Shown here one piece after another: positions 3,055 through 40,339 of a stretch of DNA of 64,000 nucleotides. The DNA lies in the IMG/VR virus record IMGVR_UViG_3300042544_001590, positions 1 to 64,000 of that record; one strand, written 5' to 3'. A model generated the notes under the pieces. The model saw only the letters and a program-made list of their open reading frames with translations. It was not told the origin of the DNA and made no database searches. The translations under genes were made by a program, and so were the position numbers. The stretch's first letter is position 1. The number at the start of each line of letters is the position of its first letter.

Positions 3055-3966
3055 ATGAGATCGAATATTGATGTTCTTAGAGCTTTGTGCTTTTCCAAGG
3101 AAGATTTGGAGCAAATCCAAAATCTGGGAGATCAATTCACTGAAAAAGAGATTGAATTCATGATTGAGTTCAAAAAGATTTATGAATTGGGGTTGAACCA
3201 ATTGGAGAAATTCATCAACAAGTTGGATGAAGAGGGGAAGGATTTGGAGACATGGGATATTGATTACTATGTGAGACATCTTCTCAATGGTCCCCTTGCA
3301 GCCCAAACACAGGAATTATCCAAAGATAAAAAATATTTCGTAACAATTCCTGATATTCTTGGGGTTCTCGGTAATAACCAATCCACCCGCCATAACACCA
3401 CACTTTACACTGATGATATCGTTGCCTTGGACGTTCCAGTGGACGTTTACAATAAAACGCCGGAATTTACCCAGAAAAATATTATAAATTCCAATGATCA
3501 GGTGGAGCGAATGTTCCGTTCATCCATGGGGATGGCTGTGATTCATGACAACACCCTCCCGATAGTTGATAAGAAGCCACAGGATCGCTACAGCGAGGAG
3601 AAGACCGGGAAGTGGGTAACTAAGTCAAACGGTAGTTATGCCGTCAAGGATTCGTTCTGGCGCGTCAAATTGGAGGATGTGCGCCAACAGGTGTTTGATA
3701 AGGTGAAAGAGATGATTGAGGAAGAACATTATCGTATATTCGAGGATCGCAAAACCTATACACCATTTGATTCCGATAAGAACGATTCGGTTGCCACCGC
3801 TTACGAAATTGAAAAGATCGTCATTGATGGTGATAAGGAAGAAACCTTCAAATTGGATGTCTATGGGGATGTTTACGACACCCGCGACACCATTCTCAAG
3901 GTTGAGAATCCTGAGAAGAACAAGGAATACCTATTGAACACCGTGGAAGGTCAATTCGGGATTTAA
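3055..3966 (+). CDS. Hypothetical protein
   Basis: 303-aa ORF starting 2 nt after the previous stop. Confidence 0.7.
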   Translation: MRSNIDVLRALCFSKEDLEQIQNLGDQFTEKEIEFMIEFKKIYELGLNQLEKFINKLDEEGKDLETWDIDYYVRHLLNGPLAAQTQELSKDKKYFVTIPDILGVLGNNQSTRHNTTLYTDDIVALDVPVDVYNKTPEFTQKNIINSNDQVERMFRSSMGMAVIHDNTLPIVDKKPQDRYSEEKTGKWVTKSNGSYAVKDSFWRVKLEDVRQQVFDKVKEMIEEEHYRIFEDRKTYTPFDSDKNDSVATAYEIEKIVIDGDKEETFKLDVYGDVYDTRDTILKVENPEKNKEYLLNTVEGQFGI

Positions 3967-6535: not shown

Positions 6536-7401
6536 TGGAGTCGTTTTCAACATTCTTTGAAAGGCGTGAGCGCAACCCTCTTCGTAAGAAAGAATTGGAG
6601 GGATCGTCCACTCATCACGATTGGGTGGAATATGATAAGAATAATCTGGAACCTGAAGATAATAAAAAAATCCGTAAGATGGAAAAGCTTGGGGTGGAAC
6701 CCGAACGCATCCAAACATGGAAAGATTATAAATTAAAGGAGAAAGAGAATCAGCTTAAACACGATTATTATAGGACTAAAATTGATGAACCAACCCTAAT
6801 ATTGGATATTTTTGGTATCAAGGTTTATACCGATCAATACACATCCTATAATTTTTCTAAAGATTCTGTAAATCTCGAAAAGGCTGAAAACACGGTCAGG
6901 GAAATTGTTCGAGATTATAAGGATATCATACCCAACCGAAAACCAAAATTTATCATCACCGATACCAGTAAAAACCCCTATACCAAGGGGGTGAATATTA
7001 CGGGAAGTGGGGATGATCCGGCTGGAGTGTATAGGGATCGTCTCATTTACATTGATCAAATGAGTTCTGATAAATATAAAATTTATATCCACGAATACGC
7101 TCATTTTCTAGAAAATCGTGTTTCCAAGCAGGTTGAAAAATTTCTCCAAGAAGAATATAAGAAAATGTTGGACGGATTCTTTCGATCCATCAAACAGAGA
7201 AAACGGGAAAATCTGGAAGGTGTTGAGAACGAAAAATACCGAAAAGCAATTGCCAAGAAGCTGGGATTACCCACGGATTATGCCGCTGCCAACCATTCCG
7301 AGTGGTTTGCCGAACTGATCGCACACTGGAAGAACATGCCGAACAACAAGGCGACATATCGTTTTAGACAAGTAATGAAAAAAATAATTAATAGACTGTG
7401 A
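6535..7401 (+). CDS. Putative zinc metallopeptidase (HExxH), possibly virion-internal
   Basis: IHEYAHFLE plus SEWFAE third ligand; MESFSTFFE N-terminus. Confidence 0.55.
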   Translation: MESFSTFFERRERNPLRKKELEGSSTHHDWVEYDKNNLEPEDNKKIRKMEKLGVEPERIQTWKDYKLKEKENQLKHDYYRTKIDEPTLILDIFGIKVYTDQYTSYNFSKDSVNLEKAENTVREIVRDYKDIIPNRKPKFIITDTSKNPYTKGVNITGSGDDPAGVYRDRLIYIDQMSSDKYKIYIHEYAHFLENRVSKQVEKFLQEEYKKMLDGFFRSIKQRKRENLEGVENEKYRKAIAKKLGLPTDYAAANHSEWFAELIAHWKNMPNNKATYRFRQVMKKIINRL

Positions 7402-16457: not shown

Positions 16458-16895
16458 ATGAAAATTGAAATCACCACGGAGGAGAAACAGAAAATTCTCA
16501 AATTCTCCACAGACATCAGACTAAAATTTGATGATGGGGAAGTTGAACCCATTCATAATTCAAAGGAATCCAAAGATTTTGTTCGTGAATTTCTAAAGAG
16601 TCGTGGAATCGGAAAACCGAGGGTTTATGAACAGGGAATCTATGCTTTTGGTGATGTTGGGATGCACACTGACAATCTCTCCCCAAAATCTGCAATGACC
16701 ATGTGTTTATTGATTTCCGGTAGTGGTAAATTGTTCGCTTGGGATGGTAAAAAGGTAAATGAATGTCGTGTCAACAAAGGAGATGGTGTTATTTTCGATT
16801 TCAATCTCCCCCACTCATTTGAAGCTGATAAAACATGCCAAGCATTTCTAGTGGACATTCCAAAAAAATATAAGAAAAATTTACTGAATGAGTGA
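16458..16895 (+). CDS. Cupin / 2OG-Fe(II) oxygenase-like protein
   Basis: MHTD ... GDGVIFDFNLPHS (HxD...H). Confidence 0.5.
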   Translation: MKIEITTEEKQKILKFSTDIRLKFDDGEVEPIHNSKESKDFVREFLKSRGIGKPRVYEQGIYAFGDVGMHTDNLSPKSAMTMCLLISGSGKLFAWDGKKVNECRVNKGDGVIFDFNLPHSFEADKTCQAFLVDIPKKYKKNLLNE

Positions 16896-17991
16896 TATGA
16901 AACTCCCCGACACTGAACAATTTAATTTTAAAGATGTCACCATTGCTGGGGATGACTGTTGGCTGATTACACCATCCAATATGGCTACCAAATGGACTGA
17001 CGACAATGCACGATTTCGTTCATGTATTGTTCGTAAGTCGGATAACTTTGTAGTGTCGCAAGGATTTTCCAAATTTACCAACTTTGGGGAGAAGCCTGAT
17101 TTTCAACCATGGGATAATTCATGGAAGATTGAAGCAATACACAAATTAGACGGAAGTCTTTTGATCGTTTCAAAGTATAAAGGGGAACTTATCATAAGAA
17201 CCCGTGGAACTGTTGATGCTCGTCAAATGGCTAATGGTCATGAGATTGATCTTCTTATAAAGAAATATCCATTCTTTTTCAATTTCTTCACCAATCATAC
17301 TCCCCCAACAATGACTCAATCTATATTGTTTGAGTGGACTACCCCCAAAAACATAATTGTGATCAGAGAACATGAAACTCCCACATTGACATTAGTTGGT
17401 GTTGCATCACATGATGTATATGAAACATATTACGCTGGTCAAGAATGGTTGGATGATTTCGCCAAAGTATATGGTCTTACCCGTCCTGAAAAGTATGAAT
17501 ACAATTCCATTGAGGAGTGCATCCTTGATGTATCTGCTTGGAAAGGAAAGGAAGGAGTGGTTTTATACTCTCCCAATGGTCAAACATTAAAGAAAATCAA
17601 AGCAAGCCTCTATTGCGAACTTCATAAAATCGCAACGGGAATGCGAACCATTTCCAATGTGCTTGATGTGTTCATGGAGTCTCCCCGATTTGTGGAATAC
17701 CAAGATTTTTATAATTTCCTCTGTAACTCACTTGATTTTGAAATCGCGGAACGTGTCAAAGATGATATCGCCAAAATCACGGAAGCATACGGCAAATTCA
17801 TCCATTCCGTCAACACCATTGAACGTGCCATGGGATACATCTCCAAGCTGGACTCCCGTAAGAAGCAAGCAATGGCTATTCAGGAGCATTGGGACGGCTG
17901 GATGGTTCCGGTTAGCTTTTCATTGCTTGACAACAAGCCAATCGATGATAAGCTGGTGAAGAAATCAATGGAGAAGCTACTGAATCTATGA
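16888..17991 (+). CDS. RNA ligase 1 (T4 Rnl1-like)
   Basis: KFTNFGE, KLDGSLLI (motif I), FEW, KEGVVL (IV), KIK (V). Confidence 0.8.
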   Translation: MSDMKLPDTEQFNFKDVTIAGDDCWLITPSNMATKWTDDNARFRSCIVRKSDNFVVSQGFSKFTNFGEKPDFQPWDNSWKIEAIHKLDGSLLIVSKYKGELIIRTRGTVDARQMANGHEIDLLIKKYPFFFNFFTNHTPPTMTQSILFEWTTPKNIIVIREHETPTLTLVGVASHDVYETYYAGQEWLDDFAKVYGLTRPEKYEYNSIEECILDVSAWKGKEGVVLYSPNGQTLKKIKASLYCELHKIATGMRTISNVLDVFMESPRFVEYQDFYNFLCNSLDFEIAERVKDDIAKITEAYGKFIHSVNTIERAMGYISKLDSRKKQAMAIQEHWDGWMVPVSFSLLDNKPIDDKLVKKSMEKLLNL

Positions 17992-18760: not shown

Positions 18761-18949
18761 GATCGCTTCGGCAGCATCACAACATTGCCAGAACCTCCCT
18801 CTACCATTCACTTGGCAAGGAGACTGGCGGGATCGAGAAATGGAGCCTTCGGGTGTGCGGAAAAAGTCAGTAATGACAGGCATAAATTCCATATATCCCC
18901 AAACTCGGATGCTGAAAAGGTGGGCGCACACCGTTCCGAAGCGATCACC
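18761..18949 (+). ncRNA. Unknown ~190-nt pseudoknotted RNA with terminal stem and 3' ACC
   Basis: TGATCGCTTCGG (18760) pairs with CCGAAGCGATCA (18936); CAGCATC/GATGCTG; GGTGTGCG/CGCACACC crossing it; TTGCCA/TGGCAA; GTCA-GTAA-TGAC; follows module at 18733. Confidence 0.7.
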
Positions 18950-19093
18950 TTTTTAATATGGACAAGAAAGTAAAAATTCATAAATTTTGGATACCTGCAA
19001 CATCTACTGTTGGGGTATCAAGAGATAGGCTTTTCGTTGCAAAGGCTGATTATGATAGAGTGATAAAGCGTATTAAAGAACTTGAAGAAAAAC

Positions 19094-20634: not shown

Positions 20635-21969
20635 TTATCCAAAATCTGAGTAACCACTAACAAGTGATTTCTCAGATTTCAGACTAAAACAACTCCATCG
20701 ACTAAAATCATAGTCCTTGAAGAGAAACCTTAATTCGTTCAGTTTCTTATTATCTCTCAGATATTCATGAATGCCTTTGTAACCAATATTCTTAGGGTTA
20801 TAGTCCGATAGAATTGAATTCCATCTCTCTTTTATCAGACCCCTATTAATCTTTGGATATAAGACATCCACATCTGAAAATTCTTTACGCTTTTTGATAT
20901 AGCGATTTAAAAACACATGGCAACGGCGAGCAATTTCTAATGCTGCCGCAATGCTGTCGGTTTCCTCTGGATGATCAAGACATCCAACGGTGGAAGAATA
21001 CGCACATATAATCTCTTGGTTTTTGATACCAAGAATGTTAAGACGCTTAATGAGGTTTTGTGAAAATTTTAAACGATTCCAAGAGTTATTAAGGAGTCTA
21101 TTTAGCTTACGTCCTTTATTGTGGTCTTTAGAAGACATTGTAAGCTTCTCAAGACCCACACATTCCACTTTATAATATTTACAGAGATTTGATATGGATT
21201 TGGCAATTTCTACAACCTCGTGATCCTTTTTATTCTTACTATACGTCTCATTCAGCTTGGTAAGATCATAAACACTCTTATGGATGATAGTATCATCATT
21301 GAAATCCCTGATTGTAAATGCGATGTAATTGGGATTTAAATCCAATCCTGTGATTCTATTTTCAATAAATTGGTGTTCTTGTTCCATTAAGACAGATTCA
21401 TCAAAAGTAATATAAATATAATTATTATCTAATTTATAAGTGATCGGGGTGGAATTAAATTCAAAATACGATTGTAACTTTTCAAGCATCTTCCATCTGG
21501 AATTTGAAGTATTTAATTTCAAATTATAATGATCATTTTTAGTGCGTTTGAATATAATTTGTTTATTTATAATATCTAATTTTAATTTTCTATTACCGAG
21601 GGGTTCGTTCCGACCACCATTAAAAAAAGCTGGTCGGCTGTTTTTAATATTATTAAATTCTTCTTTAGTAATTATGCCTTTATTAAAACGTTTCCACTGA
21701 TTAAGTGATCCAAATGTTGTTTTGGTTTGTTTACACTCTTTAGCGGATTTAAAGAGAGCGGAAGCATCTCCAATTTGTGCTGCAAGGATGCTGGCATCAA
21801 CCAAATCATAATTAACATTGTAAGAACTCTTGATTTTTCTGGTGGCGTGGGTGATATCGTGTTTTTCCTTTTTGAAAATATTGAAAGCAATTCTTTTGAT
21901 CTTGTTGCATTCCTTGAGGAATGGTGCAAGATCGGAATCACATTCATATTTGACTTTGAGAGTAGTCAC
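20635..21969 (-). CDS. tnpB: TnpB/Cas12f-like RNA-guided RuvC nuclease, no TnpA
   Basis: RuvC I GLDLNPNYIA, II VGLEKL, III ETDSIAAALEIARR; AYSS motif; no zinc finger; probable GTG start 5 nt after TAAATA. Confidence 0.75.
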   Translation of the reverse strand: MTTLKVKYECDSDLAPFLKECNKIKRIAFNIFKKEKHDITHATRKIKSSYNVNYDLVDASILAAQIGDASALFKSAKECKQTKTTFGSLNQWKRFNKGIITKEEFNNIKNSRPAFFNGGRNEPLGNRKLKLDIINKQIIFKRTKNDHYNLKLNTSNSRWKMLEKLQSYFEFNSTPITYKLDNNYIYITFDESVLMEQEHQFIENRITGLDLNPNYIAFTIRDFNDDTIIHKSVYDLTKLNETYSKNKKDHEVVEIAKSISNLCKYYKVECVGLEKLTMSSKDHNKGRKLNRLLNNSWNRLKFSQNLIKRLNILGIKNQEIICAYSSTVGCLDHPEETDSIAAALEIARRCHVFLNRYIKKRKEFSDVDVLYPKINRGLIKERWNSILSDYNPKNIGYKGIHEYLRDNKKLNELRFLFKDYDFSRWSCFSLKSEKSLVSGYSDFG

Positions 21970-22010
21970 ATAAGTATTTAGTATATAACACGTTATTTTT
22001 TGAAATAGTG

Positions 22011-22038
22011 TTGACATCTTTAAAAACTAGATTACAAT
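22011..22038 (+). promoter_or_regulatory. Module copy with canonical -35: TTGACA-N16-TACAAT
   Basis: Same arrangement at 46175 (TTGACT-N16-TACACT). Confidence 0.75.
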
Positions 22039-33536: not shown

Positions 33537-34553
33537 ATGAAACATTACTCATTCCCTAAAATCCGCCAATACCATCAAGTTTTGCGCGATCTGAAACTTC
33601 ATCACCAATACGTTGGCAAGGATGAAATTGGCAATCCCATTTTTGATTCCAGTATCAAGCTTCCCGTAGTGGATTTCGTTGGATATACGAAACTTCATGG
33701 GACGAATTCCTCCATCGTGTTCTCTTATGATGGGTCGTTCTATTGCCAATCAAGGGAGAACGTCATCGATGAGGTGAAAGACAATGCCGGATTTGCCCAT
33801 TGGGTGAATAAGGAAGGAAAGGGAATTTTTGATCTGATCAAGCACCATTTTGATGGGTGGGATGGTAAGGTTGTGTTGTATGGTGAATGGTGTGGAGGTT
33901 CAATTCAAAAGGGTGTTGCCCTGAATGAGCTTCCCAAGATGTTTGTGGTGTTCGGTGGTAAAAAAGTGTGTATTGTTGATGCGGAGACTTCAGAATGGTT
34001 TGATACTTCCCAAATTCAAGATCATTCCATTAATGTCTATAACATCACGGAAGCTCCGCAATATCGCATTTGGGTTGATCTTGAACGTCCTGATAAAGCG
34101 ATTGAGCAAATGACCGCATGGGTTGATGAAATCGATGTGGAATGCCCTTTCGCTAAAATGTTGGGTGTATCTGGACATGGGGAAGGTATCGTATTTCGAG
34201 AAGCTACTAAACATTCGTTTGATAACGCATTCAAGGTAAAGGGAGAATCCCACTCCAAATCCAAGATCAAAAAGCTTCCAACAGTAGATGTGGTCAAGAT
34301 GGATGGTATCCAAGAAGCAGTGGAAACCCATTGCCATGAAGATAGGATGCAACAAATCTACGATAAGATCGTCCTGACGGAAGCCGATAAGGTTCCCCAA
34401 AAGATTGGTGATTTCATCAGGCTATTGATTGAGGACGCATGGATTGAAGAAGGGGATAGCATCAGAGCATCCGATATCTCTCGTAAAGAATTTGGTGCTG
34501 CGGTATCCAAAAAAGCGGCAAGATGGTTTCAAGCTAAAATTTCTGAATTTTAA
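33537..34553 (+). CDS. RNA ligase 2 (Rnl2-family)
   Basis: KLHGTN (motif I), QSR, LYGEWCGGSIQKG, GEGIV, FKVK. Confidence 0.82.
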   Translation: MKHYSFPKIRQYHQVLRDLKLHHQYVGKDEIGNPIFDSSIKLPVVDFVGYTKLHGTNSSIVFSYDGSFYCQSRENVIDEVKDNAGFAHWVNKEGKGIFDLIKHHFDGWDGKVVLYGEWCGGSIQKGVALNELPKMFVVFGGKKVCIVDAETSEWFDTSQIQDHSINVYNITEAPQYRIWVDLERPDKAIEQMTAWVDEIDVECPFAKMLGVSGHGEGIVFREATKHSFDNAFKVKGESHSKSKIKKLPTVDVVKMDGIQEAVETHCHEDRMQQIYDKIVLTEADKVPQKIGDFIRLLIEDAWIEEGDSIRASDISRKEFGAAVSKKAARWFQAKISEF

Positions 34554-35073
34554 TATGATTGACATATTTGAAAAACATGGGCTACGCATTGCCCGAATGT
34601 TGGCATGGTCTAAGTCCAGATATCGGGAAGAGAATCCCGATCATGTCGTGGTATTCAATGCCAATGTCTTCACGGAATCATCCGGTAAGGTGTGGCATGG
34701 AGACTTGGACTTGACAAAGGATGGGGATGTGCTAAAGTCCATTTCAAAGGAGATTGGCGAATCGCTGTATGTCCTGTATGAGATGGATGGAAGGTTTGGC
34801 AATGAGAATCTGAAATTTGATTTGGTGGAAGAAAAAGCAATTGGAAAATTTTGATATGAATCACAAATTCTATTACTATGAATACTCCGATGATGGGGGA
34901 CTTACTTGGACTTTCGGGGACTATAGAAAGCATTTGATAACAATCATAGATGTTGCCAGAGATAATCCATATAAAATTCGAATTAAGAATGAAAATGATG
35001 AAGTAGTTGGCTATGATTTAATAGTGACAACTGAAAATGAACTTGATACTTTTATGAAAATAATGAATAAATT

Positions 35074-35640
35074 ATGAACTTATATTGTGTACGTCATGGC
35101 CAGTCGGAGGGTAATATTAATCCCGAAGCGTATTACCAAATGCCCGAATGGAAAATCCCTCTTACGGCAGAGGGTAAGAAACAGGCTGAAAACGTTGGTA
35201 AGAATTTGTCGGATATTGATAGTTTTTACATGATTTCCAGTCCATATGTGCGAGCTAGGGAAACAGCAACCATCATCAAAAAACAAATCAAGACAATATA
35301 TTCCTATTATCAAGAATCCCCACTAATCATCGAACGAGCATGGGGCAACCTACGGGATGAAGTGAATCAATTTAAAACAAGGGAAGAGCGCAATCACCTA
35401 TTTGATTTCTATCGTCGCCCAACGGGAGGGGAATCCTTTGCAGATGTTTATCAGAGGGCATTCGTCTTTCTGGAATATCTCAAGAATAATTTCAATGATC
35501 CCAAGGATATCATCATTGTATCCCACGGGGAATTCCTCAAGGTTCTGCTTATGATCATTGATGGGAACACTGTGGAGGAATTCAATGATCTGCCGAATCC
35601 CAAGAATTGTCAGATCATCACAAGAAGAATCAACGAATAA
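35074..35640 (+). CDS. Histidine phosphatase (phosphoglycerate mutase family)
   Basis: RHGQS, SSPYVRARET, GGES, VSHG, N-C-I. Confidence 0.9.
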   Translation: MNLYCVRHGQSEGNINPEAYYQMPEWKIPLTAEGKKQAENVGKNLSDIDSFYMISSPYVRARETATIIKKQIKTIYSYYQESPLIIERAWGNLRDEVNQFKTREERNHLFDFYRRPTGGESFADVYQRAFVFLEYLKNNFNDPKDIIIVSHGEFLKVLLMIIDGNTVEEFNDLPNPKNCQIITRRINE

Positions 35641-38300: not shown

Positions 38301-38762
38301 ATGCACCCCCAATTCAATCCCCAAGCCCTGCTTAACAAACCTCTGGAAATCTCCTATTGGAAAGATTCCATTGGGGAGGACGCAAAAATCGTTGACATTG
38401 GGGAAGACCAATATAAGATCGTATTTGAGCAAGCACCGGAAGACGATGATCAGGAAGACCTTTTCATTTGGACAACCCAAGAACCGGAATCAATCGAAGG
38501 AGATAGAGCATTCTTCCGAAACATTGGAGCAACAAATTTCTATCTGAAAATCAAACAAAAACTAGAATACAATAACATTATGAAAACAACAGTAAAGGAA
38601 CTGAGTGAGAAGCTGGGAGTAGATACCGTGTATGTGAACGGATTTCTTCAAACCCTAATCAAGATGGGCAAGGCAAGCGTGGTAGGCAAGGTTGAAAAAC
38701 CTAGCGGAACCCGTGGCAAGCCTTCCAATATCTACGAAATCAACGAGGGTATCGTTGACTAA
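38301..38762 (+). CDS. In-frame fusion of two module genes; second part (ATG 38580) is a small HTH-like protein
   Basis: Module at 38556 begins CAAAAACTAG instead of TAAAAACTAG and is read as QKLEYNNI-M. Confidence 0.6.
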   Translation: MHPQFNPQALLNKPLEISYWKDSIGEDAKIVDIGEDQYKIVFEQAPEDDDQEDLFIWTTQEPESIEGDRAFFRNIGATNFYLKIKQKLEYNNIMKTTVKELSEKLGVDTVYVNGFLQTLIKMGKASVVGKVEKPSGTRGKPSNIYEINEGIVD

Positions 38763-38774
38763 CAATTTTCCAAT

Positions 38775-38973
38775 GGAGCAACGGTGTGGAAAATCTTAGA
38801 CACACAGCAGAGTCGCTTGAAGTATCTCTGGATTAGTTTATCAGGCAAGAAAGAAGGAAAGACGAAACCTTCCCCCTGACGCACGAGTAGCCAGTCGTGG
38901 TGAAAGCCAGATATGTTGAGTAGATCGTGGGCATGATCAGCCTAGAGTGGGGGTAAGACCCACTTGCTCCACC
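38775..38973 (+). ncRNA. Unknown ~200-nt RNA with tRNA-like acceptor, D-like and T-like arms
   Basis: GGAGCAA/TTGCTCC+ACC; GTGT/ACAC; GTGGG-7nt-CCCAC; internal TCAGG/CCTGA, GAAGG/CCTTC, CACGA/TCGTG; no convincing ORF. Confidence 0.7.
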
Positions 38974-39060
38974 TTTTTAATAAATAAAACACTAACCACC
39001 GCGAAAATGCGTGGCCTGACGGCAAATGGAAGCTCTACCAAGTGGGGGACTGGCATTCTG

Positions 39061-39183
39061 CATAACGCCGATGTGATGGCATCGCTGCCGAGAGCGAGCG
39101 TCGATCCTCCAACCAAACACTGATATGCCAAACGACTCCGACAACACAGCGGGCAGCGATTGTCCATCCACGCCTTGTTCGCT
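39061..39183 (-). mobile_element. Integron attC-like site 1
   Basis: AAC-GCCGATGT-GATGG-CATCGCTGCC ... GGCAGCGAT-TGT-CCATC-CACGCCTT-GTTCGCT: imperfect palindrome with unpaired spacer and extra bases on one arm. Confidence 0.7.
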
Positions 39184-39427
39184 TTTTCGAGCCACTTGGG
39201 AGGAGAGAGATGGTAAAATGGAACCTGTGAATACTCCTGATCTCTTCGTGTGGGCCTGCGTGAACACAAAAACCGGAGAGGTGGAGATGACGGAAATCCA
39301 GCCCTTCGACGACGATCTCAATGAGAACCTTGTGGAAGGGTGGGAGTGGAGACGCTTCCGACTCATTGAAGCGAACGTCCAAGGCCATGCGACGGCGCGC
39401 AGTGGCCCGAATCCACCACCGACTTGA
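39125..39427 (+). CDS. Cassette-borne hypothetical protein
   Basis: GC-rich; starts inside attC1 loop and ends inside attC2 loop. Confidence 0.6.
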   Translation: MPNDSDNTAGSDCPSTPCSLFRATWEERDGKMEPVNTPDLFVWACVNTKTGEVEMTEIQPFDDDLNENLVEGWEWRRFRLIEANVQGHATARSGPNPPPT

Positions 39428-39464
39428 ACGGCTAGTTCCCGTTGCCATGACTCCCTTGTTAGCC
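39370..39464 (-). mobile_element. Integron attC-like site 2
   Basis: AGCGAAC-GTCCAAGG-CCATGCGACGG ... CCGTTGCCATG-ACTCCCTT-GTTAGCC. Confidence 0.65.
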
Positions 39465-39475
39465 TTCTTAATTTT

Positions 39476-39691
39476 ATGACCTACATACCAGACCCAATCG
39501 AAAGAGGCGAGATGCGTGCCGAGGCCGCATACGATGAAATGATCCAACCTGACGGCAGGATGAAATGCCCGTGCGGAGAACTGTTCGACCCCGACAGCGA
39601 GGGCGGAACACTCAGCCCCGATCCGTATGCAATGCCCGTCTGCGGGAAATGCTGCGAGGAGTATTTTTCTCAGGCTAACAGTAACTTATGA
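39476..39691 (+). CDS. Cassette-borne small zinc-binding hypothetical protein
   Basis: CPCG...CGKC; GC-rich; bounded by GTTAGCCT (39458) and AGGCTAAC (39672). Confidence 0.65.
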   Translation: MTYIPDPIERGEMRAEAAYDEMIQPDGRMKCPCGELFDPDSEGGTLSPDPYAMPVCGKCCEEYFSQANSNL

Positions 39692-39778
39692 CCCCCAATA
39701 AGTGTCCATAACCATGCCGGAATCAATTACACGCTTTCCTTACTACATTCTTAAAAACTAGAATACAATACAAAAACA

Positions 39779-40339
39779 ATGAGCAAAACGCTAATTACAA
39801 CACTGTCGGTTCTTGGAGGTGTCATCCTCCTTGGAGTAATCCTTTTGGTTTCCGTTCTGGGAAGCTTCAACTCTTACACAAGGTTTGAGAATCTGGCGAA
39901 AGCGGCACAAACGGATAATAAGAACATCCTTGATAACACCCGAAAATCCATTCGGGAAGCTGCCAACGTATCGGATAAGGAAGTGGAAGCCCTTACCAAT
40001 ATCATCACGGGTTATGCTGATGCGAGAGGGGGCAACACTGCTGGAGACGGTCAACTTGTCACTGTAGGTATGGTGACGGAAGCAGTCCCAAGCATCCAAG
40101 GCATTGAAACGCTGAAGAACCTGCAAAACATCGTGGTTGCAGGACGAAAGGATTGGCAAATGGCACAAACACGATTGGTTGATATCAAACGACAAGCGGA
40201 TAATATGATTGGAACCGTACCATCTGGAACCATTCTGAAATGGTTTGGTAAAAAGGAAATTGAAATTATCATCGTAACTTCCAAGGAAACCGAAGGTAAT
40301 TTTGCCACTGGTGAGGATAATTCCAATTGGGTTGAGTGA
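39779..40339 (+). CDS. Membrane-anchored helical protein (LemA-like)
   Basis: N-terminal TM helix then a helical domain; paired with the next membrane gene. Confidence 0.45.
   Translation: MSKTLITTLSVLGGVILLGVILLVSVLGSFNSYTRFENLAKAAQTDNKNILDNTRKSIREAANVSDKEVEALTNIITGYADARGGNTAGDGQLVTVGMVTEAVPSIQGIETLKNLQNIVVAGRKDWQMAQTRLVDIKRQADNMIGTVPSGTILKWFGKKEIEIIIVTSKETEGNFATGEDNSNWVE

What the first reader, a model, noticed from the sequence alone, without database searches (positions are those of the whole stretch)
38764..38982. ~200-nt tRNA-scaffold RNA with a large multibranch domain replacing the anticodon arm
Seen: 7-bp acceptor GGAGCAA/TTGCTCC + A + CC, D-like and 5-bp/7-nt T-like arms, about 140 nt of structured insert. 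Lacks the G3-U70 of tmRNA. Lies immediately upstream of the attC array. Established analogues of tRNA-like non-tRNAs: T4 stable RNA species C/D and bacterial Y RNAs. Function unknown.
Basis: partly seen in the sequence, partly recalled or inferred. Interest (0 to 1): 0.68.

Follow-up and report, generated by a model that had tools for sequence, protein, structure and literature searches.

The report
Phage tRNA-shaped RNA carrying a payload
This is a real gene for a roughly 200-base RNA built on a tRNA-like frame, with a large folded insert where the anticodon arm should be; it belongs to a widespread family found almost only in phages, absent from Rfam, whose function is unknown.

Summary
Window 38775-38973 (+) encodes an RNA with a 7-bp acceptor stem (GGAGCAA/TTGCTCC), A73, CC, a D-like arm, a 5-bp/7-nt T-like arm and a 141-nt branched insert.

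ARAGORN and Rfam 15 find nothing there. A covariance model built only from 23 similar units in unrelated viral contigs hits the window once, exactly here (38.4 bits, E 7e-7), and misses the five true tRNAs.

About 75 hits were collected (many from overlapping or duplicate loci), including cultured Pseudomonas and Ochrobactrum phages. They share a conserved frame, 5' ..CAG-CG-GCGUG-GAAAGCAGA-CACGC and GCCGG-AGUAGCGC-CCGGC-CUG.. 3', around a 48-179 nt insert that varies in sequence and length. All three frame helices covary. A D-loop/T-loop contact covaries too, which suggests a tRNA-like elbow.

The window's insert type recurs in three other phage lineages, with 24 of 43 predicted pairs showing compensatory changes. 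The flanks (AAU|G ... ACC-UUUUU) match those of the phage's own tRNAs. Family members often sit inside phage tRNA clusters, as T4's RNAC and RNAD do.

It is not a tRNA with an intron, not a tmRNA and not a Y RNA. The "attC array" is a gene-start motif. The most likely reading is a non-decoding, tRNA-derived carrier matured by the tRNA machinery; what the insert does is unknown.

The parts
38775..38973 (+). Predicted RNA gene: 199 nt from G+1 to the encoded A73-C-C. The terminal A is not encoded.
   Evidence: sequence; model R1 hit 38775-38970, 38.4 bits, E 7e-7, full model; consensus structure with homologues L062, L129, L130.
38772..38774 (+). AAT leader directly before G+1. The window's true tRNAs have the same -3..-1.
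   Evidence: tRNA leaders read GAAT|G, AAAT|G, AAAT|T; this RNA reads CCAAT|G.
38775..38781 (+). Acceptor-like stem, 5' strand GGAGCAA. It pairs with 38964-38970 (TTGCTCC).
   Evidence: All 7 family pairs carry changes on both sides.
38784..38805 (+). D-like arm: stem GTGTG/CACAC (38784-38788 with 38801-38805) and loop GAAAATCTTAGA.
   Evidence: Loop segment UCUUA is complementary to T-loop UAAGA.
38806..38946 (+). Payload domain replacing the anticodon arm (141 nt).
- Long stem P3: 38815-38820 with 38916-38921.
- Long stem P4: 38826-38831 with 38907-38912.
- Hairpin P5: 38841-38845 with 38875-38879.
- Hairpin P6: 38890-38893 with 38898-38901.
- Hairpin P7, in the variable-arm position: 38928-38932 with 38940-38944, with the palindromic loop AUGAUCA at 38933-38939.
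   Evidence: 43 predicted pairs, 24 with compensatory changes, across window, L003, L062, L129 and L130; two 1-nt indels against L003 argue against coding.
38947..38963 (+). T-like arm: stem GTGGG/CCCAC, 7-nt loop GGTAAGA. The loop is not the canonical TTCRANY.
38964..38970 (+). Acceptor-like stem, 3' strand TTGCTCC.
38971..38978 (+). Discriminator A, CC, then TTTTT. The window's tRNA genes have the same 3' context.
38301..38762 (+). Upstream conserved 153-aa gene, with an internal gene-start motif at 38557 followed by an in-frame ATG at 38580. The RNA follows its stop codon by 12 nt. The RNA has no motif of its own, so it is probably co-transcribed with this gene.
38979..39081 (+). Spacer that travels with the RNA in the closest relatives. 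The block spanning 38763-39081 aligns at 97.5% identity, and similarity breaks off after it.
39082..39749 (+). Strain-specific, GC-richer cargo. It holds ORFs 39125-39427 and 39476-39691 with no family match. L003-type relatives carry about 1.3 kb of other DNA here, and L011-type relatives carry nothing.
39750..39788 (+).

Best explanation
Window 38775-38973 is the gene for a non-decoding, tRNA-derived RNA. It belongs to a widespread family found almost only in phages.

The family shares a conserved frame:
- a 7-bp acceptor-like stem;
- the dinucleotide CG;
- a 5-bp D-like arm;
- a 5-bp T-like arm that abuts the 3' acceptor strand;
- base pairs between the D-loop and the T-loop, which would give a tRNA-like elbow.

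In place of the anticodon arm the frame carries a structured payload that differs between lineages. In this phage the payload is a long stem capped by two hairpins, plus a hairpin in the variable-arm position.

Inferred mechanism:
1. The RNA is transcribed with the upstream gene, or from that gene's internal gene-start motif.
2. RNase P cuts after the AAU leader.
3. The 3' end is trimmed at the U-run.
4. The CCA-adding enzyme completes ACC to ACCA, as for the phage's own tRNAs.

On this reading the frame supplies maturation, stability and an L shape, while the payload does the lineage-specific work. My preferred guess for that work is binding or titrating a host or phage factor in the phage-host conflict over tRNAs, acting as a decoy, sponge or aptamer.

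Shown here: the gene, its structure, its family membership, the tRNA-type flanks and the association with tRNA clusters. Inferred only: expression, processing, CCA addition and the payload's role.
For: Membership:
- Model R1, built from 23 units in unrelated contigs, hits the window once, at 38775-38970 (38.4 bits, E 7e-7, full length), and hits none of the five true tRNAs.

Frame structure:
- 98.2% of cells are paired, and 14 of 16 pairs changed on both sides. The covariation score is 0.53 against 0.15 in shuffles. Slid controls are 25-49% paired.
- An alignment made by MAFFT alone, not fitted to any structure, gives the same helices.

Elbow:
- D-loop G[C/U] covaries with T-loop [G/A]C: 25 GC/GC, 4 GU/AC, none off the diagonal (Fisher 4e-5, not corrected for phylogeny).
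- The window subtype has UCUUA in the D-loop and UAAGA in the T-loop.
- A subtype with the canonical GG and TTCGAAT loops links the family to tRNAs.

Payload:
- The same architecture occurs in L062, L129 and L130, with 24 of 43 pairs compensated.
- L062 sits at a different genomic position in a distant relative of this phage.

tRNA-type context:
- Leader AAU|G and tail ACC-UUUUU match the window's true tRNAs.
- Family members lie co-oriented inside or beside tRNA clusters: L064, L078, L085, L086, L096, L101, L115, L128 (POI1126, between tRNA-Met and tRNA-Gln), L137, L138.

Phage-specific:
- One 24-nt degenerate version of the 5' motif found only 5 MAG contigs among 185,579 genomes. There were no E. 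coli matches and one Brucella replicon of 59 kb.

Variable slot:
- At this same slot, relatives carry other tRNA-like RNAs or none.

Background on conflict:
- Phage tRNAs and tRNA loci act against tRNA-cleaving defences (PMC10264068; abstract of PMC13096335).
Against: - No expression or end-mapping data exist for any member.
- The window copy is 19 kb from the nearest tRNA and has no gene-start motif of its own.
- Most family members outside this lineage lack an encoded CC. A few have leader-trailer pairing of 8-12 bp, which would hinder RNase P.
- The D and T loops lack G18G19 and T54-Psi55-C56, so recognition by tRNA enzymes is not assured.
- No conserved protein partner was found beside the units, so the payload's target is a guess.
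- The single-sequence folding energy is unremarkable (z = -1.79).
- The alignment used for the pair counts was fitted to the model.
- Payload covariation rests on only four lineages.
Confidence: 0.55

Rival explanations
1. It is a true tRNA gene interrupted by an intron (group I or other) in the anticodon loop, and splicing yields a decoding tRNA.
For: It has cloverleaf-like ends, tRNA-type flanks and phage RNA ligases nearby (16888-17991 and 33537-34553). At the same slot, relative L011 carries a 96-nt RNA that scores 42 bits on Rfam tRNA with 42 nt in place of the 17-nt anticodon arm.
Against: ARAGORN finds nothing at the site. Rfam reports no tRNA and no group I intron match there, even at E <= 10. 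No 5-bp stem with a 7-nt loop flanks the insert. The covarying helices P3 and P4 continue straight from the junction. Across the family the insert is hypervariable in sequence and length (48-179 nt), with no conserved exon-like anticodon stem. An insert of about 140 nt is, as far as I recall, shorter than known group I introns.
Confidence: 0.05
2. It is a miniature tmRNA-like molecule that is charged and acts in trans-translation.
For: The topology is the same as tmRNA: an acceptor and T arm enclose a large insert. It has an A73-CC end.
Against: Position 3:70 is A-U, not G-U. ARAGORN's tmRNA search and Rfam are both negative. Two separate 1-nt indels inside the insert between the window and L003, which are 97.5% identical, would break any reading frame. 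Acceptor positions 1-3 take all four pair types across the family, so there is no conserved charging identity.
Confidence: 0.02
3. It is a cis-acting element of the upstream mRNA (a terminator or 3'-UTR stabiliser) or a DNA-level recombination site, not a free RNA.
For: It starts 12 nt after a stop codon, has no gene-start motif of its own and ends in a T-run flagged as terminator-like. The slot is a hotspot of gene gain and loss. L044 holds a truncated copy fused to other sequence. In Persinger and L059 units lie beside integrase genes.
Against: The same RNA occurs in different genomic contexts (L062, L129, L130), in tandem arrays 9 nt apart and inside tRNA arrays. That pattern fits independent gene units. 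The frame is much more elaborate and conserved than a terminator needs. G-U pairs occur in the helices. Wherever tRNAs are adjacent the units are co-oriented with them, which points to an RNA on this strand.
Confidence: 0.12
4. The frame is real, but the RNA is aminoacylated and donates an amino acid outside the ribosome, or primes or marks something through its CCA end. On this reading the payload is secondary.
For: In the window lineage G1-C72, A73 and the encoded CC are conserved. Several synthetases do not need the anticodon (textbook knowledge of AlaRS, SerRS and LeuRS).
Against: Acceptor sequences are hypervariable across the family, and most members encode no CCA. The window has no G3:U70 and no G73.
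Confidence: 0.08

Closest known systems
Bacteriophage T4 stable RNAs, species 1 (RNAC/rnaC, 139 nt) and species 2 (RNAD/rnaD, 119 nt)
   Same: Both are phage-encoded small RNAs with tRNA-like ends and an enlarged middle. rnaC folds with a canonical T arm directly before its 3' closing strand. Both T4 RNAs lie at the end of the T4 tRNA cluster, as many members of the present family do. Their roles are unknown (PMC3014915, PMC9697503).
   Different: No detectable sequence or profile similarity: R1 does not hit the T4 region (L058 was among the sources). T4 rnaC keeps the canonical TTCGAAT loop, whereas this family mostly has AGUAGCGC, or GGUAAGA in the window. The present family has a sharply conserved 5' motif and a hypervariable insert.
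Canonical tRNA (Rfam RF00005), including class II tRNAs with long variable arms
   Same: Shared features are a 7-bp acceptor, 2 nt, then a D arm; a T arm abutting the acceptor; a D-loop/T-loop contact; and a hairpin (P7) where class II tRNAs have their variable arm. Flanks are identical to those of the phage's tRNAs. One family subtype retains GG and TTCGAAT loops.
   Different: There is no anticodon stem-loop. The D stem has 5 bp, positions 8-9 read C8 G9 rather than U8, and the loops are non-canonical. Neither ARAGORN nor the Rfam tRNA model detects it.
tmRNA tRNA-like domain
   Same: An acceptor and T arm enclose a large insert.
   Different: No G3:U70, no tag reading frame, a stem-bearing D arm, and about half the usual size.
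Bacterial Y RNA, YrlA (PMC4201824)
   Same: A non-coding RNA that mimics tRNA, sometimes phage-encoded.
   Different: By my recollection of that work (the paper was listed but not read here), in YrlA the 5' and 3' ends close the Ro-binding stem, which corresponds to the anticodon stem, and the acceptor is a closed hairpin. Here the ends form the acceptor, and the order is D arm, insert, T arm. No Ro60 gene was looked for.
Engineered 'tRNA scaffold' for expressing recombinant RNAs, and MHV68 tRNA-miRNA (TMER) transcripts (both from general knowledge)
   Same: The working principle I infer is the same: a tRNA body gives processing and stability to an unrelated RNA placed in or next to it.
   Different: Those are synthetic or eukaryotic-virus cases. 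No natural bacterial or phage family of this kind is in Rfam 15 or in the papers searched.

Membership tests
Phage tRNA-like scaffold family defined here (model R1) | Significant full-length match to a covariance model built without the window lineage | tested here: met
   38775-38970 (+), 38.4 bits, E 7e-7, model positions 1-135 of 135. It is the only hit in 64 kb at E <= 10.
Phage tRNA-like scaffold family defined here (model R1) | 5' motif ..CA(R)-CG-G(Y)GUG-GA..AGA-CAC(R)C, with a 7-bp closing stem and a 5-bp D stem | tested here: met
   GGAGCAA CG GTGTG GAAAATCTTAGA CACAC.
Phage tRNA-like scaffold family defined here (model R1) | 5-bp T-like stem abutting the 3' closing strand, preceded by an A | tested here: met
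   A-GTGGG-GGTAAGA-CCCAC-TTGCTCC.
Phage tRNA-like scaffold family defined here (model R1) | Complementary D-loop and T-loop dinucleotides (GC/GC or GU/AC) | tested here: met
   the window subtype has UU.. with ..AG, within a 5-nt complement UCUUA/UAAGA. This is invariant within the subtype, so it is supported only by comparison between subtypes.
Phage tRNA-like scaffold family defined here (model R1) | Location in or beside a tRNA cluster (frequent in the family, but not universal) | tested here: not met
   the nearest tRNAs are at 57.7-59.8 kb. However, relatives carry other tRNA-like RNAs at this same slot.
tRNA (RF00005) | Anticodon stem-loop (5 bp with a 7-nt loop) | tested here: not met
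tRNA (RF00005) | Conserved G18G19 and T54-Psi55-C56 loops, and U8 | tested here: not met
   the D-loop is GAAAAUCUUAGA, the T-loop is GGUAAGA, and positions 8-9 are CG.
tRNA (RF00005) | 7-bp acceptor with the T arm stacked on it, and a discriminator followed by CCA | tested here: met
   ACC is encoded; the final A is not.
tmRNA | G3:U70 alanine identity pair | tested here: not met
   A3-U70.
tmRNA | Conserved tag reading frame | tested here: not met
   two 1-nt indels inside the insert between copies that are 97.5% identical.
tmRNA | Detection by ARAGORN or the Rfam tmRNA models | tested here: not met
T4 species 1/2 RNAs (rnaC, rnaD) | Sequence or profile homology | tested here: not met
   included L058 (the T4 tRNA region); there was no R1 hit at E <= 0.01.
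T4 species 1/2 RNAs (rnaC, rnaD) | Stable RNA matured by RNase P, with CCA added | not testable with these tools
   Needs RNA from infected cells.
Group I intron within a tRNA | Match to the group I intron core | tested here: not met
   no such match at E <= 10.
Bacterial Y RNA (YrlA) | Ends closing a Ro-binding stem, with the tRNA-like module permuted (T arm, acceptor hairpin, D arm) | tested here: not met
   the ends form the acceptor, and the order is D arm, insert, T arm. The YrlA topology itself is from my recollection, not checked in the paper.
Bacterial Y RNA (YrlA) | Ro60/Rsr gene nearby | not tested
   The window's proteins were only partly scanned.
   the repeats are direct copies of AAAAACTAG.. 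placed about 18 nt before ATGs. There are 96 in the window, and they also precede tRNAs.

The most novel reading that the evidence does not exclude
Phages of many lineages use one conserved, tRNA-derived frame as a plug-in carrier for fast-evolving RNA payloads. The host's tRNA-maturation machinery would cut out and stabilise the RNA. The payloads would be RNA effectors (aptamers, decoys or sponges) aimed at host defence or tRNA-targeting systems. That would make this a natural counterpart of the synthetic tRNA scaffold and an RNA analogue of anti-defence gene islands. It could also give a lead on the 50-year-old question of what T4's RNAC and RNAD do.
Probability: 0.3. Interest if true: 0.88.

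Novelty: new variant of a known kind. Interest (0 to 1): 0.72.

Why it matters
Phage tRNA-like RNAs without a decoding function have been known since T4's species 1 and 2 RNAs, and their roles are still unknown. This finding leads to a much larger family, found almost only in phages, with three useful properties.

- **A sharply conserved frame.** The evidence includes covariation at a tertiary contact, so the tRNA-like fold is a specific, testable prediction.
- **An insert that varies between lineages but is itself conserved and structured within them.** That is the pattern expected of a modular carrier with a payload.
- **Members in cultured phages of Pseudomonas and Ochrobactrum.** Expression, processing, binding partners and phenotypes can therefore be tested directly.

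The family is absent from Rfam 15 and unannotated in the phage records inspected. At the least, it fills an annotation gap in phage tRNA clusters.

Tried and rejected
**Detectors at the site**
- ARAGORN and Rfam (gathering thresholds, then E <= 10) found nothing.

**Similarity searches with the window region**
- blastn of the region and of 18 kb around it against cultured phages found no match.
- Exact patterns for the window's T arm and 3' payload returned only the same phage lineage.

**Scans I wrote myself**
- A first loose cloverleaf scan was far too unspecific and was dropped. A stricter one was useful.

**Search for a protein partner**
- All-against-all blastp of ORFs within 2.5 kb of 30 units, plus Pfam on 20 nearest neighbours, gave no recurring family. 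Neighbours included integrase, ThyX, RNR, a methyltransferase and structural genes.

**Metagenome scan**
- The scan with the neighbouring protein returned only 14 loci.

**Literature**
- No paper in the library holds the motif.
- No paper found describes anticodon-less tRNA-like RNAs in phage tRNA clusters.
- The supplements of the viral structured-RNA survey PMC10690425 are not held, so I could not check whether the family is among its 10,006 candidates.

**Hypotheses considered and rejected**
- An RNase P RNA remnant: the GGAAAGAC stretch recalls GGAAAGUC of RNase P, but there is no Rfam match and the stretch is not conserved in L062, L129 or L130.
- A coding tag peptide: indels break the frame.
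- A retron msr/msd: no reverse transcriptase gene turned up among the window ORFs scanned or among the 20 unit neighbours scanned. Those scans were partial.
- attC sites.

**Not done**

Full report
**What is there.**
The window is the first 64 kb of a 207-kb uncultured phage contig from freshwater metagenomes, IMGVR_UViG_3300042544_001590. It has about 40% GC and tightly packed plus-strand genes. It carries T4-type RNA ligase 1- and 2-like genes, a histidine phosphatase, a GIY-YIG endonuclease and five tRNAs at 57.7-59.8 kb.

A 362-nt gap lies between the stop codon of a conserved 153-aa gene (38301-38762) and the next plausible ORF (39125). Inside it, at 38775-38973 (+), the sequence reads as follows:
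- GGAGCAA, then CG;
- GTGTG, a 12-nt loop, CACAC;
- 141 nt of insert;
- GTGGG, GGTAAGA, CCCAC;
- TTGCTCC, A, CC, TTTTT.

Position 3:70 is A-U.

**Known-family detectors are blank.**
ARAGORN finds only the five true tRNAs. Rfam 15 reports nothing at the site, either at gathering thresholds or at E <= 10. The single-sequence fold is only marginally better than shuffles (z = -1.79). Thermodynamics alone therefore would not carry the claim.

**The slot is a hotspot for tRNA-like genes.**
The closest relatives (L001-L007, L035) keep the RNA at 97.5% identity, with two 1-nt indels inside the insert, and carry different cargo downstream. Other relatives carry something else directly after the same gene:
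- a roughly 70-nt cloverleaf with a GNRA hairpin in place of the anticodon arm (L008, L017, L036, L037);
- a 96-nt RNA that scores 42 bits on Rfam tRNA, with 42 nt in place of the 17-nt anticodon arm (L009-L011);
- nothing (L012-L016).

More distant relatives (about 55% protein identity; L043-L046) have tandem arrays of three to six such RNAs, as little as 9 nt apart, mixed with a tRNA-Val and a tRNA-Trp.

**A widespread family.**
The window RNA shares a 5' motif with several array members. I scanned IMG/VR for that motif and required a matching 3' strand and T arm. This gave about 33 distinct units in about 30 otherwise unrelated viral contigs. Their frame is almost invariant:
- 5' NNN(G)CAG-CG-GCGUG-GAAAGCAGA-CACGC;
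- an insert;
- A-GCCGG-AGUAGCGC-CCGGC-CUG(C)NNN 3'.

The insert is hypervariable, 48-179 nt long.

I built a MAFFT alignment of 23 of these units with the window lineage left out. RNAalifold predicted the acceptor, D and T helices from it. The covariance model built on that alignment (R1) hits the window once, at 38775-38970, over its full length (38.4 bits, E 7e-7). It hits none of the true tRNAs.

Across all sequence fetched, R1 gave 52 + 8 + 2 + 13 hits, several of them from overlapping or duplicate loci. They include:
- arrays of two or three units (L075, L059, L077, L137);
- units inside arrays of 23 and 35 tRNAs (L115, L085);
- full units in cultured phages: Pseudomonas phages Persinger and Orimi01 and Ochrobactrum phage POI1126. 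None is annotated in the records.

Using one 24-nt degenerate version of the 5' motif, only five MAG contigs among 185,579 species genomes matched. There was no E. coli match, and one Brucella replicon of 59 kb matched. On that limited test the family looks essentially phage-specific.

**Structure evidence.**
On 46 distinct members the 16 frame pairs are 98.2% paired, and 14 pairs show changes on both sides. The covariation score is 0.53, against 0.15 for shuffles. Sliding the partners by 1-3 columns drops pairing to 25-49%. That alignment was fitted to the model, but the MAFFT-only alignment shows the same pattern: acceptor positions 1-3 changed on both sides in 14-16 of 23 sequences, with 0-2 broken.

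A tertiary contact is also indicated. D-loop G[C/U] covaries with T-loop [G/A]C: 25 GC/GC, 4 GU/AC, none off the diagonal (Fisher 4e-5, uncorrected for phylogeny). The window subtype has UCUUA facing UAAGA. Another subtype keeps the canonical GG and TTCGAAT loops. The frame therefore looks like a diverged tRNA body with an elbow.

**The window's payload.**
Two further scans and R1 found the same payload type in L062, L129 and L130. Together with the window and L003, RNAalifold predicts 43 pairs, 24 of them with compensatory changes. The helices are:
- a long stem, P3 and P4;
- two hairpins on top of it, P5 and P6;
- a separate hairpin, P7, in the variable-arm position. Its loop (N-Y-GAUCA; UGAUCA in three of the four lineages) is palindromic.

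L062 belongs to a distant relative of this phage, but the RNA sits at another genomic position there. In that genome the syntenic slot holds a different family member. The RNA thus behaves as a movable gene unit.

**How it probably works.**
The leader (AAU|G) and the tail (ACC followed by a U-run) are the same as those of the phage's true tRNAs. Where tRNAs are adjacent, family members are co-oriented with them. From established knowledge of tRNA maturation, I infer cleavage by RNase P, 3' trimming and completion of the CCA end.

There is no anticodon arm. Acceptor sequences vary freely, and indels break any reading frame. Decoding, a conserved charging identity and a tmRNA-like tag are therefore all unlikely.

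No protein family recurs next to the units. The conserved frame most plausibly engages conserved host machinery, while the payload carries the lineage-specific function. I favour a role in phage-host conflict (decoy, sponge or aptamer), for three reasons: the inserts are hypervariable, they sit in accessory or hotspot regions, and phage tRNA loci have documented counter-defence roles (PMC10264068; abstract of PMC13096335). This last step is inference only.

**Comparison with the known.**
The nearest precedent is T4 RNAC and RNAD. These small RNAs come from the T4 tRNA cluster, and their roles remain unknown (PMC3014915, PMC9697503). rnaC has a canonical T arm beside its 3' closing strand. R1 does not detect the T4 RNAs, and Rfam has no model for them or for this family.

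The RNA fails the defining tests for tRNA, tmRNA, a tRNA containing a group I intron, and Y RNA. The claimed attC array is a gene-start motif present 96 times in the window.

**Verdict.**
This is a real, structured RNA gene. The RNA is a member of a large, apparently undescribed phage family of tRNA-derived carrier RNAs. Function is unproven, but it is now testable in cultured phages.

Noticed in passing
window 18764-18950 (+): A second candidate non-coding RNA of about 187 nt. It has an 11-bp closing helix (GATCGCTTCGG/CCGAAGCGATC), the same CCAAT|G leader and ACC-TTTTT tail as the finding, and a gene-start motif 12 nt upstream. It is 86% identical at nucleotide level in the distant relative L111. 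It has no Rfam match and is not hit by R1.
   Followed up: partly
window, 96 sites (for example 37670, 37892, 38554, 39750): The motif TTAAAAACTAG(A)ATACAAT sits about 6-9 nt before almost every ATG and directly before the tRNAs. No Shine-Dalgarno sequence is evident. It is probably a phage-specific promoter or gene-start signal.
   Followed up: partly
window 38554-38592, inside gene 38301-38762: A copy of the gene-start motif lies inside the 153-aa ORF, where it encodes the conserved KLEYNNIM, and is followed by an in-frame ATG at 38580. This suggests an internal start producing a 60-aa C-terminal product. It could also drive transcription of the RNA.
   Followed up: no
L008, L017, L036, L037 (e.g. 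L017:4484-4556) and L009-L011 (e.g. L011:4459-4554): At the same slot, relatives carry unrelated tRNA-like RNAs. One is a roughly 70-nt cloverleaf with a GNRA hairpin in place of the anticodon arm. Another is a 96-nt RNA with canonical D and T loops and a 42-nt replacement of the anticodon arm (Rfam tRNA, 42 bits).
   Followed up: partly
L028:12618-12721 (contig 3300042319, a close relative): A 104-nt tRNA-like RNA with canonical D and T loops, a 50-nt middle and an ACC-TTTT tail. ARAGORN does not call it, and it is absent from the window.
   Followed up: partly
L044:2591-2687 and L045:3638-3735: A tRNA-Val (GAC or AAC) sits inside a longer structure. A 4-nt 5' extension (GAAG) pairs with sequence beyond a 3' hairpin (..AACTTC), forming an extra outer helix around the tRNA.
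   Followed up: no
L093:7014-7179 (-): A family unit whose payload is itself a tRNA-like cloverleaf; ARAGORN reports 'tRNA-???' at 7036-7132. It is a nested, Russian-doll arrangement.
   Followed up: no
L044:3243-3362: The 3' part of an L043-type long unit is fused to unrelated sequence. This truncated copy suggests recombination within these RNA genes.
   Followed up: no
L086:3261-3342: A DUF3800-VII RNA (RF02967, 37.7 bits) lies directly upstream of a family unit (3347-3468). A tRNA-Met lies 360 nt further upstream.
   Followed up: no
L126 (Pseudomonas phage Persinger) 2495-2595; L059 7990-8237: Family units lie right next to integrase genes: 12 nt after the stop codon in Persinger and 45 nt from the gene in L059. 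A possible link to attP was not examined.
   Followed up: no
window 20635-22017 (-): The only long minus-strand ORF (460 aa), in a low-GC patch (35%). It has no Pfam match and may be a foreign insertion.
   Followed up: no
window 33537-35640: An Rnl2-like RNA ligase (33537-34553) and a histidine phosphatase (35074-35640) lie 3-5 kb upstream of the RNA. An Rnl1-like ligase is at 16888-17991. Together they are a possible RNA-repair set.
   Followed up: partly
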